A stretch of DNA of 64,000 nucleotides from positions 186,001 to 250,000 of the forward strand of contig JBBPEB010000003.1 in the NCBI GenBank assembly GCA_039096225.1, read 5' to 3'. Positions 8,387-15,821 of the stretch are shown piece after piece. The notes under the pieces are model-generated. The model saw nothing but the letters and a program-made list of their open reading frames with translations. It was not told the DNA's origin and did no database searches. Position 1 is the stretch's first letter. Each line of letters starts with the position of its first letter. The stretch is from Blastocystis sp. Blastoise. Lineage: Eukaryota > Protista > Bigyra: Opalinata. Position numbers and translations under genes: made by a program.

Positions 8387-10591
8387 ATGTCTATGCGTTC
8401 TACCTCTGTTCTTTTAAAGGTATATATACTATGCTAATCTTGTATATTCATTTTCTTACAAAAAATCATAAAGTAACAAAAAAAGTCACACATTACATTT
8501 TTTAAAGGCTTCTCAATTTGCTAGAAACTTTGCTTCTGAAGGTATTTATATTCATATACACTTTCATTAATATAATTAGCTCGTCCTTTTGATAAGATTC
8601 TTGTTGCCAACCGTGGTGAAATTGCTTGCCGTGTCTTCAAGACTGCCAAACGTATGGGTATCAAAACTGTAGCTGTCTATTCTGAAGCTGATAGATATGC
8701 TAAGCATGTCAAGATGGCTGATGAAGCTATTTGTATCGGACCTGCTCCTTCTAAGGATTCTTATCTTAGAATCGATAAGATTATTGCTGCCTGTGAACAA
8801 ACTGGTGCTAACGCTGTTCATCCTGGTTATGGTTTCCTTTCTGAAAATTGGAAGATGGCTGAAGCTCTTGAAGCTAAGGGTATTAAATGGTGTGGTCCTG
8901 GTAAATATTCTATTGAAGCTATGGGTGATAAGATTCAATCTAAGATTCTTGCTGTTGAAGCTAAGGTTAACACCATTCCTGGTTTCAATGGACTTATTGA
9001 AACTGATGAACAAGTCATTAAGATTTCTAATGAAATTGGCTATCCTGTTATGATTAAAGCCTCTGCTGGTGGTGGTGGTAAGGGTATGAGAATTGCTCAT
9101 AATGATAAAGAAGCTCTTACTGGTTATCATCTTTCTAAACAAGAAGCTTTAGCTGCTTTCGGTGATGATCGTATGTTCATTGAAAAGTTTATTGAAGAAC
9201 CTCGTCACATTGAAATTCAAGTTCTTGCTGATAAGCATGGTAACTATTGTGCTTTCCCTGAACGTGAATGTTCTATTCAAAGACGTAATCAAAAAGTCGT
9301 TGAAGAATCTCCTTCTTGTTTAATTGATCAAGCTACTCGTAATGCTATGGGTAAACAAGCTTGTATGATGGCTAAGAAAGTCGATTATTGTTCTGCTGGT
9401 ACTGTAGAAATGCTTTGTGATAAACATAAGAATTTCTATTTCCTTGAAATGAATACTCGTCTTCAAGTTGAACATCCTATTACTGAAATGGTTACTGGTG
9501 AAGATCTTGTTGAACAAATGTTCTGGATTGCTGCTGGAAGAGAACTTCCTGATAGACTTAAGAACTGGCCTCTTAAGATTCATGGTAATGCTATTGAATG
9601 TCGTGTTTATGCTGAAGATCCTCTTCGTAATTTCCTTCCTTCTCTTGGTCAACTTACTAAATATGTTGAACCTACTGGTGAAGGTGTCCGTTGTGATTCT
9701 GGTATTTTAGAAGGTACTCAAATTTCTATGTATTACGATCCTATGATTTGTAAACTTGTTTGTTGGGGTGAAAATCGTGATATTGCTATCTCTCGTATGG
9801 ATGATGCCTTAAATACATATATTATTCGTGGTCTTAACCATAACTCTGCTTTCTTACAATCTGTTATTCGTTCTGCTAGATTTAAGTCTGGTAAGATTAC
9901 TACTGCTTTTATTCCTGAAGAATGGCCTGAAGGTTGGAAAGGTGTTACTTTAACTGAAGAAGAAGGTCATCAACTTATTGCTGCTACCATGGCTGTTCAT
10001 AGAGATAGACTTCTTGAATCTTTTACTAATGATCAATCTCTTGATTCTTATCAACCTGAACTTACTAAGGATCTTGTTCTTACTTTCAATGATAAAGATT
10101 TCGAAGTTAAGGCTAAATATGATAACGTTAATAACAATATGACTCTTACTGTTAATGGTAAAGAAGTTAAGGTTGAAAATCCTCATATGATGGAAAATAT
10201 TCCTATTATGAGAGCTACTGTTGATGGTAAAGATACTAAGGTCCAATATTTCAATCCTACTGCTGAAGGTTATAAATTACAATATTGCGGTGGTATGTTT
10301 GATGTTATTGTTCGTGAAAAGAGAGCTTCTGAATTATCTAAATATATGATTCCTAAGAAGGCTGTTGATACTTCTAAATCTCTTGCTTCTCCTATGGCTG
10401 GTGCTCTTGTTGCTCTTAAAGTCAAGGTTGGTGATAGAATTGAAGCTGGTCAAGCTTGTGCTGTCGTCGAAGCTATGAAGATGCAAAATGAACTTTATTC
10501 TCAAAAGGCTTGTGTTGTCTCTGCTATTAATAAGAAGGTTGGAGATTCTCTTGCTCTTGATGATATCATCATGGAATTCAAATTAGAATAA
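8387..10591 (+). CDS. PCCA: Propionyl-CoA carboxylase alpha chain, mitochondrial/MRO
   Basis: Exons 8387-8419, 8508-8541, 8580-10591. Presequence-like MSMRSTSVLLKASQFARNFA, then KILVANRGEIA, HPGYGFLSEN, KASAGGGGKGMR, ERECSIQRRNQKV, FLEMNTRLQVEHP and biotin site EAMKMQN. Confidence 0.93.
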
Positions 10592-10922: not shown

Positions 10923-11833
10923 TTAGAACGTAGTTGTATATGCACCTAAACTTATATATCCTTTTAATTGGCCTCCTGTACTCATTGCAACTGTAATACT
11001 TTCGTAGGTAGTAGCTTTCTGATTTACTTCAAATATACCCTGTATGCTGATTTTATTGTTAGTTGCAGTTAATTTGATACCTACATGAAGATGTTGAGCA
11101 GGAATACCTTTTACATATATATTAGTTTCTGTAGTAGAACAATTGACATAGTTATAAGCATATTCTGTAGGAATAAGATCGGAAGAAGAAGACCCATGTA
11201 TACTAAATAAACCTTCTGATAAATTATGGAACTATATATATAGAGATAATAATATAAGGCAGAAGATATAGAGTAAAGTAATAGAGTCATATGATTATCA
11301 TTTTGTTTATCATTATTCATAATAAATAGAATAAAAAGTATAATAATAAATAGAATAAAAAGTATAATAATAAATAGAATAAAAAGTATAATAATAAATA
11401 GAATAAAAAGTATAATAATAAATAGAATAAAAAGTATAATAATAAATAGAATAAAAAGTATAATAATAAACACCATAAACATAATAATAATAATATATAA
11501 ACATAATAATATATAAACATAACATACAGTTCGTTGTCTCCAGAAAAGATCTTGAGATGGCAAAGGACATCGTATAAATAATTGCGGGAATTGTTGATGA
11601 TCAACAGTACAAGGAGTATATATAATATTCTGTATATGTAATACAGTAAGAGGCGCGGGATGTAATGGCGGGAAACTCAGAGAAAATAACGAGAAAACAG
11701 GCTTGTGATCAGAGAAACAAATTGAACAATCTGTATCATAACTATGATATATATATATTATGTCAAGGGTTATTATATATAATATATATTTTATAATAAT
11801 CATTCTATTCAATAATAGTAAATAATATTACAA

Positions 11834-11864
<31 letters not shown>

Positions 11865-12988
11865 CGATAGTTGTTCTATACACTTCACAAGTCCTGGCAT
11901 AACTGAATAAATTATACGATCTGTGTACGAAGGCGTACGGATTCCCTTCTTCACGTGCGTCGTTAGACTATCAGACACAGCATCATAATCCGTATAATCC
12001 TTACAATAACCGCGGGACTGCTTATAGTATCGAAAAGTAGGAGGGAAATGAATAGGTCCTTCTTTGAAGGTGTAATAGATCTATATATAGAAGAAATCTT
12101 ATAGTTATATTATCAATATTCATAAAGAAATTATATAGAGCAAAAAAACTAAAAATAAAAAAAAAATAAAAAAATAAATAGAATTCATAATATTATATAT
12201 ATGTATATAATTAAATTATTAAAATACATTATGTTTATTCATTTCATAAAATAGTTGGTCAAATCTCTCTATATAGCTCTTTTGATAGCTATTATTATTT
12301 ATATGCTGCTTCTCATTCTCTGCATTCGTAATCGCATAAAATAATCCCATTAATTGTGTTTCTTGAGAAATCCCCCATTGTTTGTTGATGACACTCTGAG
12401 GGTCAAACGTGTCAGGTGACAATGGTGAAATAGCGAATGACGCATACTCCGTCGATGGAGACATATCATTCTCTAATAAGTGTGTTTTAGAAGTAGTATT
12501 TATACTTGTATTTATAGTTGAAGAAGACTGATGATGAGATAGAGACGCGAGTTGTGCTCTAATTTGATCATTTATATAATCATCCTCATAATGATAATAA
12601 CAACGGTAATTCATATCTCCAGCAATAAACTAAGAAATAGAGACAAATGATAGTTATATATGTATTAGTAATAATAATAAATATAATATGTTTAATAAAT
12701 ATAATAAACATAATATATTTAATAAACATAATATATTTAATAAATATAATAAACATAATAATAAACATAATATACGGTGGCAGTATGTAGATAATGTGTG
12801 TCCCAGTCCTCAGTATCTTCGTGTTCAATATTAATCGACGATAATATACTGTGACACTCCTCTACTCTCTTTCCTATATTCGACTTACCCTATAGAATAT
12901 TATATATATAGAATATATTATATGATTGATTCATATTCAACTATATTATTGAATATATACTAATAATATATCGAATATAAAAATATTA

Positions 12989-13045
<57 letters not shown>

Positions 13046-14883
13046 TACTATCACTGCTAAGGTGACATCCCAAAAAGAACAGATTCTGACCTCCAGAAAG
13101 ACGAATAGATAGACCTGACGCACCCTTATTTCCCGCGGTAAAGAGAACAACATTCTTTCCTGTTCTTAACTATAGCATATATATAGAGTCATAAAATAAA
13201 TAAATAAAAATAAAGTTTATATATATATATATATACAGTAGAATTAGTAGTAGTTTTAACATCAGAAGAGAGATTCTTATGTAAATATACAATTGTAAAC
13301 ACATAACCGTGGTAACCCAATAACTTCTGAGTACTATATATATATATATAAGGTAAAATAAGAATATATATATGGTTAAAAGTATATATATATAAGTGAT
13401 AAAATAAGAATATATATATGGTTAAAAGTATATATATATACCCTCCAATATAACTGGTATATACTTCGTACTGTCCCTCTCGATTGATGTAACCGCTAAG
13501 AAAAGACAACGTCTGTGATAAATCCATGCACTCCTATATATATATATAGTATATACATAGTATATACATAGTATATAAATAATATATACATAGTATATAA
13601 ATAATATATAAAAAGTATATAATAATATATACTTGAAAAGAGAAGAAGTAGATGTCTTTATGTTCAGGTATATCTTTAAATATACTCGTTGTCAGTTTGG
13701 CTTCTCCCAAGTTGAATGTTAATATAAAGAGAGACGCCTTTAAAGGGGAATCATATGTATCAAGAGATGTATGTTCATTCATCGAAATAAGAGCTATTTC
13801 TTGAGCCGAGTCAGTAGGTCGCCTCTTTATACAGGGTATATATGTGTGTCCTGTAAGGAATAGTGAAGTGATGAATCCAAGAGAGGATGTAGATAGAGCA
13901 TGTAATATATATATAGGAAGAGGAGGAGTAGAGAAGACTTCCCAGAGACGGTGAATAAGAGCCAAACTCCAAAGGAGAGAATAGAGAGAGATATAATTCA
14001 ATAACTATATATTATAATAATAACAAACATAATAATAATTGATAATAATAATTATTATTATATTATTATTGAACTTAGAGAAGAAAAAATGAATCAAATT
14101 ATACATAGAATAAGAATTAAAAACTAATAAAACATTACATATATATATACTTTCTTATATAGTTGATTGCCAATATCCACGGGAATATTACGTTTTTTTA
14201 AGAGGATTTTAATAGAAAAACACATATAAAGGTCATAAAGTATACATAGAAATAGAGGAATATAAAAAATAGTTAATTCCCAATTATCGTCAGTTACCCT
14301 GTATATATATATATAATATATAATATATAGAATAAATAATATATTCGTTTATGATTCATAAAAACTCTAAATACTATATTATATACCAGCACCATAATTC
14401 TGCATTCTCAATTTTATTTGCTGATAATAATATAATAACGGAAAGAAGAGGGATTCCATAAGATATACAGTCATATATAGTACTCATTAATGGATTTCGC
14501 GGAGGTGCTAAATTATGAATATGATGGGCCATACATCCAGATAAAAGGGCACTATTCAAAATGAAAAATTGAAGTAAAGAACCTTGAAAAGAACAACTGA
14601 ATCCTTCTGGATCAAATATAACACCATAAAGATGACAGAAGGCAATTCCAAATAACTATAAGAACATATAAATAAATACAACATTAAAATTTACAGATAT
14701 ATTCAATTCATTTAATAGTTTTTGACTTAATGACAATTTTCTTCTTTTCTGAAACAACACGTAAAATACCTATCAACTAATAGAAACTAATATGAACAGA
14801 AATCTTACAATACTACAGGAAATAAGTGACAATACACACATAATGCTTGTCAAAACAATTAGCAACACGCTGTTTTCATACAT
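10923..14883 (-). CDS. 7TM GPCR (cAR/GCR1-like) fused to inositol polyphosphate 5-phosphatase
   Basis: About 13 exons, all joined by in-frame GT-AG introns. The N-half has seven hydrophobic segments with CSFQGSLLQFF, YGIPLL, WCWV and FYIPL. The C-half has FILTFNLG, DIYFFSFQE, GNKGA, GCHLSS, AGDMNYR, DQL..EGPIHFPPTFRY, PSYTDRI and SDHKPV. Confidence 0.9.
11321..11470. repeat. Intronic 24-bp minisatellite, ~6 copies (AATAAATAGAATAAAAAGTATAAT)
   Basis: Visible tandem units in the last intron of the GPCR-INPP5 gene; they generate the spurious repetitive ORFs in the track. Confidence 0.95.
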
Positions 14884-15821
14884 TTAGTTAAGCTCAATAT
14901 ATTATTATATAAAAAGGAACAATAAAATATTTAATTTGGCCTTTTAGACAGCTTAAAAACTAAAAAATTGGGAACAGGGAAAAACGATAAACTGCTTCTT
15001 TTTCTCCTGCCTTTCAGGGAAATAAAAGCGTTGTACTATTTTTTAAGTTTTTGACCAAATAGCACCTAGATTATTTAAAGTGAGCATTTCAATATATACA
15101 GTTATATAGAATTCAATGGTACTTCGTTCTTTGAAGCAGTAAAGGATAATAGCATCATATTGTTGACTGTAACGATTCAAAATAATTAAAAACTGTTTAG
15201 ATTTACTTAGCTTATATGAATTATTATACAAACTAATAAAATGAAGTGCTCATTTTTAATTATATGATATGAAATAGAATAATTTTTTCTTATTTGTATA
15301 TGTGTTACATAACATATACAATATAGAAAACAAAACAAAAACAAAAATGTATAGATTTAACCAGTGAATGTGTACTGAATAAAAACAAAATTGTATTTTT
15401 TGTGTTGATGTCCATGAAGGATGAATTTCTGAATGTTTCTGTTCATCAGCATATATCCTTTTGTAAATAATTAGCAACATAAGTAGACTATTAAGTATAC
15501 AATGAATAATCCAATAAAAAACGACAATGATATGTGTTTTCCAATCGAATCGAATTGTTATTGAAATCAGCAATGAGTCGATGAATCGTGATTTATTACA
15601 CTACTTAGCGATCAAATTGAGTATATTCACGGAAAGACTATCAGTTATGTGATTTCAACAGGGATTCCAAAAGAAAGATATTTCCTTGGTTTTTTTTTTA
15701 TTTTTGTTTTCGCAATATTAAAACACAAATATATTTCTTATTCAAAAAAGTATTCATTGAAAAGAATCACTTCATTCTTATTAAAACTTGCTTTAATATC
15801 ATTATAAAATAAAATCATCAT

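What the first reader, a model, noticed from the sequence alone, without database searches (positions are those of the whole stretch)
10923..14883. GPCR-inositol 5-phosphatase fusion: a one-piece receptor-enzyme
Seen: TM6, TM7 and the first INPP5 strands (FILTFNLG..DIYFFSFQ) lie in one exon (ORF 13534..14001), so this is not two genes merged by annotation. The catalytic motifs GDMNYR, PSYTDRI and SDHKPV are intact. Known: GPCR-INPP 'bigrams' are described mainly from oomycetes. Inference: its presence in this non-oomycete-looking genome implies an older or independent origin of a receptor that could couple an external ligand directly to phosphoinositide dephosphorylation. The automatic ORF track misses it entirely.
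Basis: partly seen in the sequence, partly recalled or inferred. Interest (0 to 1): 0.8.

Follow-up and report, generated by a model that had tools for sequence, protein, structure and literature searches.

The report
Receptor fused to lipid phosphatase, Blastocystis
A tortoise-gut Blastocystis has one gene that joins a seven-helix surface receptor to a SHIP-like phosphoinositide 5-phosphatase, a divergent member of a receptor-enzyme family described so far only in oomycetes and one alga, which pushes the fusion back to early stramenopiles.

Summary
On the minus strand, 14883..10923, lies a 13-exon gene with GT..AG introns only (exon GC 34%, intron GC 12%). Exon 5 (13633-14004) encodes TM6, TM7, a short linker and the first 5-phosphatase strands in one open frame, so it is one gene.

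GenBank already carries the model as a 'hypothetical protein' (KAK8814128.1, Blastocystis sp. Blastoise, 821 aa). It probably starts 14 residues too late.

- Pfam finds Dicty_CAR (6.6e-12) and the 5-phosphatase family (2e-35).
- In the AlphaFold model, residues 1-233 match GPCR bundles (Z 23-25).
- Residues 262-820 match the SHIP2 phosphatase-C2 crystal structure (Z 33.7).
- All 5-phosphatase motifs are intact.

The host is a stramenopile, so 'non-oomycete-looking' does not mean outside the oomycetes' lineage. Collinear relatives occur in Platysulcus tardus, Triparma, many oomycetes and unnamed environmental sequences. Both domains score about twice as high against profiles of that family as against the general Pfam models. 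This supports one old stramenopile origin, not an independent one.

No G-alpha was found in the genome (weak negative), which fits direct receptor-to-enzyme coupling. No RNA reads could be laid.

Verdict: a new, divergent member of a known kind; moderate interest. A first-reader note (s1-733062, unchecked) reports a different 7TM-phosphatase fusion elsewhere in this genome.

The parts
14809..14883 (-). Exon 1: proposed start codon (ATG 14883) and first half of TM1. The GenBank model starts 14 codons further in, at an internal Met.
   Evidence: A stop lies directly upstream in frame. The extra 14 hydrophobic residues complete TM1 when aligned with relatives.
14695..14769 (-). Exon 2: end of TM1, basic intracellular loop 1 (KRRK), start of TM2. 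Intron 1 is 39 nt, as in the GenBank model.
   Evidence: P0001 is an exact suffix of the joined translation with this acceptor. The loop carries 5 K/R.
14387..14655 (-). Exon 3: TM2 to TM4 and the extracellular loop 2 hairpin (NAELWCW), with the conserved TM3 and loop 2 cysteines.
   Evidence: This exon alone gives Pfam Dicty_CAR 2.6e-07. C57 and C125 are invariant in the family.
14151..14298 (-). Exon 4: TM5 and basic intracellular loop 3.
   Evidence: Frame and splice sites; helix 130-161 in the models.
13633..14004 (-). Exon 5: TM6, TM7, basic patch and about 35-residue linker, then the first 5-phosphatase strands (TFNLGE, DIYFFSFQ). This is the physical junction of receptor and enzyme.
   Evidence: One uninterrupted frame. 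It matches P0001 residues 176-299 at 100% identity. The linker has low pLDDT.
13442..13533 (-). Exon 6: supplies the catalytic Glu of the FQE motif, then a helix and strand of the phosphatase.
   Evidence: Phase-0 splice gives FQ|E. Q299 and E300 are invariant in the family.
13237..13333 (-). Exon 7: phosphatase strands (GYHGY motif).
   Evidence: Invariant G336, H338 and G339.
13044..13169 (-). Exon 8: NKGA substrate-contact motif and the CHLSS catalytic His.
   Evidence: Aligns with SHIP2 GNKGAVG and CHLTS. N376, K377 and G378 are invariant; H398 is nearly invariant, 90% or more.
12776..12889 (-). Exon 9: helix after the catalytic His (SSGKS...KR).
   Evidence: Conserved with Platysulcus (HLSSDSSGKS).
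12228..12629 (-). Exon 10: GDMNYR catalytic motif, followed by a disordered insert of about 70 residues (pLDDT below 50 at P0001 residues 482-552) and the DQL helix.
   Evidence: alignment. pLDDT is under 50 at 482-552. Platysulcus has a variable, acidic insert at the same place.
11866..12080 (-). Exon 11: PPTFRYY and PSYTDRI motifs.
   Evidence: This exon alone gives Pfam Exo_endo_phos2 8.4e-08. It aligns with SHIP2.
11528..11741 (-). Exon 12: SDHKPV motif, end of the phosphatase domain and start of the C2-like beta sandwich.
   Evidence: Model range 262-820 aligns with SHIP2 phosphatase-C2.
10923..11231 (-). Exon 13: rest of the C2-like domain and the TAA stop.
   Evidence: Strands 742-820 in the model. 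SHIP1/2 phosphatase-C2 matches reach model residue 820-821.

Best explanation
This is a real, single, intron-rich gene of a tortoise-gut Blastocystis. It encodes a membrane protein of about 835 residues (821 in GenBank).

Layout, in order:
- an extracellular N-terminus of only a few residues;
- a seven-helix receptor bundle of the cAMP-receptor-like kind;
- a basic patch and a flexible tether of about 30 residues after TM7;
- a cytosolic SHIP-like module: a Mg-dependent inositol polyphosphate 5-phosphatase followed by a C2 domain.

It is a very divergent, single-copy member of the stramenopile GPCR-INPP 'bigram' family, inherited vertically from an early stramenopile ancestor.

Most likely mechanism: a small ligand binds in the helix bundle or extracellular loops. 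The resulting shift of TM6/TM7 and the short tether changes how the phosphatase-C2 unit sits on the inner leaflet. That changes local removal of the 5-phosphate from PI(4,5)P2, or from PI(3,4,5)P3 if the cell makes it, without a G protein in between.

Shown here: gene structure, domain make-up, topology, intact catalytic motifs, family kinship.
Inferred: regulation by a ligand, the substrate, and independence from G proteins.
For: Gene:
- 13 exons, all introns GT..AG, one frame, exon GC 34% against intron GC 12%.
- Exon 5 alone spans TM6, TM7, the linker and the first phosphatase strands.
- An independent public model has the same exons. It comes from a genome whose size, contig count and GC match Rus-B of PMC12129017. 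[quoted passage not shown]

Domains:
- Pfam gives Exo_endo_phos2 2e-35 and Dicty_CAR 6.6e-12.
- The hydropathy scan gives six clear peaks plus TM6 just under the cut-off, a positive-inside charge pattern and a cytosolic C-terminus.
- The AF2 model of the receptor part has pLDDT 84.5 and pTM 0.81. Its top PDB hits are adhesion, secretin and Frizzled GPCRs, with TM-score 0.6-0.8.
- Whole-model residues 262-820 align with SHIP2 phosphatase-C2 at Z 33.7, rmsd 3.1 A over 393 residues. Phosphatase-only structures stop at about residue 673.
- By sequence, the best solved relatives are SHIP2 and SHIP1, at 7e-16.

Kinship:
- Platysulcus tardus transcript product: 880 aa, E 4e-55, 94% coverage.
- A profile search returns about 20 proteins with both domains, from oomycetes, Triparma, MMETSP and metagenomes.
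- Profiles built without the query score it at 85.8 bits for the receptor part (Pfam gives 45.6) and 252.9 bits for the phosphatase part (Pfam gives 123; canonical 5-phosphatases score about 90).
- In the tree it sits at the base of the fusion clade, apart from the outgroups, with support 97/90.

Context:
- PIP5K genes are present.
- The G-alpha profile hits only Arf/Arl genes, and the G-alpha switch II motif has no match.
Against: - Transcript continuity therefore rests on exon 5, the public model and word shares of 0.55 and 0.36 in two runs.
- Nothing here shows ligand binding or catalysis.
- The receptor half is strongly derived. The family's near-invariant TM2 Asp and the TM7 LQGFxNAxVYGG motif are lost. 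The branch is very long, at 3.33, and composition is biased. The bundle may therefore no longer sense anything.
- The own-genome family search missed the Dicty_CAR domain that is demonstrably present. The negative results for G-alpha, PLC and the PI3K RBD are therefore weak.
- An RGS-like exon does exist.
- Domain-to-domain geometry in the model is unreliable because the linker has pLDDT under 50.
Confidence: 0.75

Rival explanations
1. The seven-helix part no longer senses anything. It acts only as a membrane anchor or sorting signal that holds a constitutively active SHIP-like 5-phosphatase at a particular membrane.
For: - The receptor half is the most diverged part. Exon 5 has no significant relative among 1.84 billion representatives apart from itself.
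- Family-conserved TM2 and TM7 motifs are lost.
- There is almost no extracellular N-terminus.
- Blastocystis has shed much of its signalling machinery (PMC12129017).
Against: - All seven helices are kept, as are the TM3-to-loop-2 cysteine pair and the LWCW hairpin.
- A single-pass anchor would do the job if only tethering were needed.
- The fusion has been kept across very distant stramenopiles.
Confidence: 0.17
2. It is a conventional G-protein-coupled receptor that signals through a heterotrimeric G protein. The phosphatase is an accessory that shapes the lipid environment or desensitises the receptor.
For: - Oomycetes, which have many GPCR-INPPs, keep G-alpha and G-beta.
- The GPCR-bigram paper leaves open whether the receptor acts on the enzyme directly or through G-protein intermediates (PMC5784254).
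- An RGS-like exon is present in this genome.
Against: - The G-alpha Pfam search hits only three Arf/Arl genes, and only in the shared switch region.
- The DVGGQRSERKK pattern has no match with up to 3 mismatches.
- Both are weak negatives.
Confidence: 0.06
3. It is an annotation artefact or a decaying gene: two neighbouring genes read as one, or a pseudogene.
For: No reads were laid across the junctions. GenBank calls it only a hypothetical protein.
Against: - TM7 and the first phosphatase strands share one exon with no stop.
- Thirteen exons keep frame in DNA whose introns are 12% GC.
- Every catalytic motif is intact.
- The same architecture occurs on single transcripts of Platysulcus, with a complete ORF.
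Confidence: 0.02

Closest known systems
Oomycete and Nannochloropsis GPCR-INPP 'bigrams' (van den Hoogen et al. 2018, PMC5784254)
   Same: Same order of parts: an N-terminal cAMP-receptor-like 7TM domain and a C-terminal inositol polyphosphate 5-phosphatase. Both domains are specifically related by sequence.
   Different: - About 23-25% identity and a very long branch.
- The shortest tether seen here: about 35 residues, against more than 100 in the Phytophthora relative found here.
- No N-terminal Q...LQ segment; TM2 Asp and the TM7 motif are lost.
- Single copy, against up to nine per oomycete species.
- The host is an anaerobic gut commensal of Opalozoa, where no member had been reported.
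- No G-alpha was found in this genome.
Human SHIP1/SHIP2 phosphatase-C2 unit (PDB 5okm, 6ibd)
   Same: 5-phosphatase followed directly by a C2 domain. Best sequence match (7e-16) and best structural match (Z 33.7 over model residues 262-820). PPTFRY resembles SHIP2's PPTYRY rather than the PTYK recalled for other 5-phosphatases.
   Different: No SH2 domain and no proline-rich or NPXY tail. It is tethered to a 7TM bundle instead of being recruited by phosphotyrosine. It carries a disordered insert (pLDDT below 50 at 482-552) after GDMNYR.
Voltage-sensing phosphatase (Ci-VSP); from my own knowledge, not tested here
   Same: Same design logic: a membrane-embedded sensor, a short basic linker, a phosphoinositide phosphatase and a C2 domain, with no diffusible transducer.
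   Different: The sensor is a four-helix voltage sensor and the enzyme is PTEN-like (Cys-based), unrelated to the Mg-dependent 5-phosphatase fold. This is an analogy only.
GPCR-PIPK (Dictyostelium RpkA, Phytophthora GKs; PMC3206951, PMC5784254)
   Same: A 7TM receptor fused to a phosphoinositide-metabolising enzyme. The published idea is that the kinase and phosphatase fusions act as a pair.
   Different: The enzyme runs the opposite reaction (PI4P 5-kinase). No 7TM signal was seen upstream of the four PIP5K loci of this genome, in a weak test.
Dictyostelium cAMP receptors (Pfam Dicty_CAR, class E GPCRs)
   Same: The 7TM domain matches the family model above its cut-off, at profile positions 72-252.
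   Different: No evidence for cAMP as the ligand. The C-terminal tail is replaced by an enzyme. The nearest solved folds are class B and F receptors.

Membership tests
GPCR-INPP bigram | N-terminal seven-transmembrane GPCR domain | tested here: met
   Dicty_CAR 6.6e-12 and 7tm_2 1.6e-4. Seven helices in the AF2 models. Foldseek and VIA matches to GPCR bundles at TM-score 0.6-0.8 and Z 23-25.
GPCR-INPP bigram | C-terminal inositol polyphosphate phosphatase domain on the same polypeptide, on the cytosolic side | tested here: met
   Exo_endo_phos2 2e-35. The junction lies within one exon. The positive-inside pattern puts the C-terminus in the cytosol.
GPCR-INPP bigram | Sequence kinship of both domains with described (oomycete) members | tested here: met
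   Leave-one-out family profiles score 85.8 and 252.9 bits. Pairwise phosphatase scores to oomycete proteins are 100-125 bits. Pairwise receptor scores to oomycetes are weak (E 0.02 or worse), but strong to Triparma, Platysulcus and environmental members.
GPCR-INPP bigram | One mRNA carries both domains | tested here: inconclusive
Indirect support only: exon 5, the public model, and word shares of 0.55 and 0.36 in two runs against an exon fraction of about 0.6.
Inositol polyphosphate 5-phosphatase (PF22669) | Signature motifs GD(L/M)NYR and P(S/A)(W/Y)(C/T)DR, plus the Asn, Glu, His and Asp-His catalytic set | tested here: met
   TFNLGE, FQE, NKGA, CHLSS, GDMNYR, PPTFRYY, PSYTDRI and SDHKPV are all present and align with SHIP2.
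Inositol polyphosphate 5-phosphatase (PF22669) | 5-phosphatase activity on phosphoinositides or inositol phosphates | not testable with these tools
   Needs an enzyme assay.
SHIP subfamily | C2 domain directly after the phosphatase domain | tested here: met
   The predicted model aligns with the SHIP1/2 phosphatase-C2 crystal structures through residue 820. This rests on a predicted structure; pLDDT in the C-terminal part is mostly 65-90.
SHIP subfamily | N-terminal SH2 domain and C-terminal NPXY / proline-rich tail | tested here: not met
   Pfam finds no SH2. The N-terminus is the 7TM domain and the protein ends with the C2. It is SHIP-like in its catalytic unit, not a SHIP orthologue.
G-protein-coupled receptor in the functional sense | A heterotrimeric G-alpha partner encoded in the genome | tested here: inconclusive
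   PF00503 hits only Arf/Arl genes. The switch II pattern has no match. The same kind of search missed a domain known to be present.

The most novel reading that the evidence does not exclude
In an organism that has apparently lost heterotrimeric G proteins, the single surviving cAMP-receptor-like 7TM protein works as a ligand-gated lipid phosphatase. Its helix bundle directly controls a tethered SHIP-like phosphatase-C2 unit, much as the voltage sensor controls Ci-VSP. This direct coupling would be the ancestral mode of the whole stramenopile GPCR-INPP family, dating to the stramenopile root.
Probability: 0.3. Interest if true: 0.65.

Novelty: new member of a known kind. Interest (0 to 1): 0.4.

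Why it matters
GPCR-enzyme 'bigrams' are an unsolved signalling design. Nobody has shown whether the receptor drives the enzyme directly, and no ligand is known.

This find matters in four ways:
- Published surveys limit GPCR-INPPs to oomycetes and Nannochloropsis. Members in Blastocystis (Opalozoa), Platysulcus (a stramenopile that NCBI leaves unplaced and that I recall, unchecked, as very deep-branching) and Triparma (Bolidophyceae) make the fusion an old stramenopile trait.
- The Blastocystis copy is single and has the shortest tether among the relatives compared here. It sits in a genome with reduced signalling and no detectable G-alpha, so it is a clean case for testing direct coupling.
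- The enzyme half is a SHIP-type phosphatase-C2 unit. That gives structure-based hypotheses about membrane docking and allostery.
- Blastocystis is a very common gut eukaryote, so a surface receptor wired to phosphoinositide turnover is a plausible sensor of gut metabolites.

The gain is incremental. The kind of protein is known and the gene is already in GenBank, though unnamed.

Tried and rejected
- **RNA reads.** No junctions or transcript ends could be shown. Locus L001 (window 12133-15504), fetched as a by-product, contains them and was not used.
- **Joined model.** My 835-residue model was used only inside local scripts for hydropathy and a local alignment. It was not sent to any search or fold tool. 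The public protein P0001 and single exons by reference were used instead.
- **Exhaustive search with exon 5.** It found only the protein itself and one low-complexity false hit. The junction region is too diverged to trace by itself.
- **Own-genome paralogue searches.** Exon 5 and the whole 7TM part gave only self-hits. The Dicty_CAR family search of the genome found nothing, although the domain is there. This shows the tool's limited sensitivity on split genes.
- **G-alpha.** Three PF00503 hits turned out to be Arf/Arl GTPases.
- **PLC and PI3K.** The PI-PLC-X and PI3K_rbd searches were blank. I treat both as uninformative.
- **Human-associated Blastocystis.** Three word-indexed protein searches returned no orthologue from subtypes ST1, ST4 or ST7 or from other tortoise strains. 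This is only a hint, because candidates are pre-filtered and those proteomes may not be indexed.
- **GPCR-PIPK partner.** The fusion-family 7TM profile gave only a low-complexity hit upstream of one of four PIP5K loci. That locus looks like Fab1/PIKfyve.
- **C2 domain by sequence.** No significant hit. It is recognised only by predicted structure.
- **Literature.** The Genome Research paper's supplements are not held. No paper links Blastocystis to GPCRs or 5-phosphatases.
Full report
**What is in the sequence**

Window 10923-14883 lies in AT-rich eukaryotic DNA. A three-frame reading of the minus strand shows short open stretches. They join through GT..AG introns, mostly GTATAT...TATAG and 39-296 nt long, into one frame of 13 exons. 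Exons are 34% GC and introns 12% GC.

The ORF at 13534..14001 contains exon 5 (13633-14004). It reads TM6, TM7, a basic patch (KRR), about 35 linker residues, and then FILTFNLGE ... DIYFFSFQ. The catalytic Glu follows after a phase-0 intron. The motifs GDMNYR, PSYTDRI and SDHKPV sit in exons 10, 11 and 12.

**Whose gene it is**

The genome has 33.34 Mb in 34 contigs. An exhaustive search with exon 5 found one true hit, an 821-residue protein identical over the exon. It is GenBank KAK8814128.1, 'hypothetical protein WA158_007990 [Blastocystis sp. Blastoise]'. That species is a stramenopile of Bigyra/Opalozoa.

Size, contig number and GC fit the Russian-tortoise isolate Rus-B of PMC12129017: 33 scaffolds, 33.3 Mb, 23.1% GC. 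Earlier notes of this scan had also called the genome a tortoise Blastocystis, which I checked in this way.

The public model equals mine from Met15 on and uses a 39-nt first intron. With that intron and the upstream ATG (14883; a stop lies just before it), the protein has 835 residues and a full-length TM1. Aligned relatives have about 13 hydrophobic residues before the conserved LS of TM1. The GenBank start leaves three. I therefore think the public model begins 14 codons too late.

The 835-residue joined model was used only in local scripts. All searches and folds used single exons by reference or the public protein.

**Domains and topology**

- On the public protein, Pfam gives Exo_endo_phos2 (the 5-phosphatase family) at 2e-35. 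It gives Dicty_CAR at 6.6e-12 and 7tm_2 at 1.6e-4. Single exons already pass the cut-offs.
- The hydropathy scan shows six clear peaks plus TM6 just under the cut-off (about residues 183-205 of the joined model). Basic loops are inside, acidic loops outside, the N-terminus is a few residues long and the C-terminus is cytosolic.
- AlphaFold2 with 17-20 relatives gives a confident seven-helix bundle (pLDDT 84.5, pTM 0.81). It includes a loop 2 hairpin and the invariant TM3 and loop 2 cysteines.
- The bundle's best PDB matches are adhesion, secretin and Frizzled-class receptors, with TM-score 0.6-0.8.
- In the whole-protein model (pLDDT 71), residues 228-258 are disordered.
- Residues 262-820 align with the SHIP2 phosphatase-C2 crystal structure at Z 33.7, rmsd 3.1 A over 393 residues. 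Phosphatase-only structures align only to about residue 673.

The last 130 residues or so are therefore a C2-like sandwich placed as in SHIP1/2.

SHIP2 and SHIP1 are also the best sequence matches among solved structures, at 7e-16. Every catalytic and substrate-contact motif lines up. A disordered insert (pLDDT below 50 at residues 482-552) follows GDMNYR. Platysulcus has a variable acidic insert at the same spot.

**Relatives**

- The word-indexed search with the public protein found one relative: an 880-residue product of a Platysulcus tardus transcript with a complete ORF (E 4e-55). It is collinear over 94% of the length, including the insert site and the C-terminal domain.
- A profile of the two sequences then found about 20 proteins carrying both Pfam domains. 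They come from Phytophthora, Plasmopara, Peronospora, Bremia, Pythium, Triparma laevis, an MMETSP transcript and unnamed metagenome or Logan sequences. Ordinary 5-phosphatases scored far lower.
- Profiles built without the query score it at 85.8 bits for the 7TM part (45.6 for Pfam's general model). They score it at 252.9 bits for the phosphatase part (123 for Pfam). Canonical 5-phosphatases score about 90.
- In a phosphatase-domain tree the Blastocystis protein sits at the base of the fusion clade, next to Platysulcus. It is separated from two canonical outgroups with 97/90 support. Its branch is very long (3.33), its composition is deviant and there are few outgroups, so its exact place is unsure.
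- All named fusion proteins retrieved are stramenopiles.

Published surveys list GPCR-INPPs only in oomycetes and Nannochloropsis (PMC5784254; PMC6033456). The evidence therefore supports one old origin within stramenopiles and argues against an independent fusion. The phrase 'non-oomycete-looking genome' should not be read as 'outside the oomycetes' lineage'.

**Copy number and context**

- The genome has three 5-phosphatase loci, and only this one is receptor-fused.
- No paralogue of the 7TM part or of exon 5 is detectable.
- Four PIP5K loci exist, so PI(4,5)P2 should be made.
- The G-alpha profile hits only three Arf/Arl genes, in the shared switch region. The G-alpha switch II motif has no match with up to three mismatches.
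- PI-PLC-X and PI3K_rbd searches are blank. One RGS-like exon is present.

These negatives are weak. The same kind of search missed the Dicty_CAR domain that is certainly there. No orthologue from human-associated subtypes came up in three protein searches, which is a hint and no more.

**Expression**

One run of the source organism's study holds 0.55 of the sampled words of the 4.1-kb stretch. A poly(A) gut metatranscriptome holds 0.36. Exons make up about 0.6 of the stretch. This fits a spliced transcript but does not show junctions.

I kept those places out of every later search.

[quoted passage not shown] I cannot tell which evidence applied to this particular gene.

**How it most likely works**

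Shown here: a 7TM bundle with almost no extracellular N-terminus, a short flexible tether with a basic patch, and a catalytically intact SHIP-like phosphatase-C2 unit on the cytosolic side.

Inferred:
- A small ligand binds within the bundle or its loops.
- Movement of TM6/TM7 is passed through the short tether to the phosphatase-C2 unit.
- That changes its docking on the inner leaflet, and so the local 5-dephosphorylation of PI(4,5)P2 or PI(3,4,5)P3.

The design parallels the voltage-sensing phosphatase (sensor, basic linker, lipid phosphatase, C2). That parallel is an analogy from my own knowledge. The apparent lack of G-alpha favours direct coupling.

The main rival is that the diverged bundle is now only an anchor: the TM2 Asp and the TM7 motif of the family are lost. 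A classical G-protein route and an artefact are both unlikely.

**Verdict**

This is a real gene and a real receptor-enzyme fusion. It is a new and very divergent member of the known GPCR-INPP family, in a lineage where none had been reported, and it is already present but unnamed in GenBank.

It extends the family to deep stramenopile branches and shows that the enzyme half is a SHIP-type phosphatase-C2 unit. It also offers a simple system for testing direct receptor-to-enzyme coupling. Interest is moderate.

Noticed in passing
window 12010 and 13133 (exons 11 and 8 of this gene): The GC-only palindrome CCGCGG occurs four times in the 64-kb window, against 0.24 expected from base composition. 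Two copies lie inside exons of this gene, as CCCGCGG / CCGCGGG.
   Followed up: partly
window 11232-11527 (last intron), array at 11319-11493: The longest intron (296 nt) is mostly a 24-nt unit repeated 7.3 times at 96% identity. Several other introns are pure (TA)n or short AT-rich tandem arrays.
   Followed up: partly
window 14809-14883: The GenBank model KAK8814128.1 starts at an internal Met in the middle of TM1. An in-frame ATG 42 nt upstream, preceded by a stop, restores a full first helix.
   Followed up: yes
G000:C24:172991-173134: An RGS-domain exon (28.6 bits, over the Pfam cut-off) sits in a genome where no G-alpha was found. It may belong to a sorting-nexin-type protein.
   Followed up: no
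If it is real, this genome has two 7TM-phosphoinositide-phosphatase fusions. Its 7TM is not detectably similar to this one.
   Followed up: no
window 8654-10591, plus strand: A 645-residue uninterrupted ORF for a biotin carboxylase-type subunit (propionyl/methylcrotonyl-CoA carboxylase alpha-like). It converges on the 3' end of the receptor gene, with about 330 nt between the two stops.
   Followed up: no
G000:C3:578652-583000 (L007): One of the four PIP5K-family loci looks like a Fab1/PIKfyve-type kinase, with a chaperonin-like stretch upstream of the kinase exons. No 7TM signal was seen there.
   Followed up: partly
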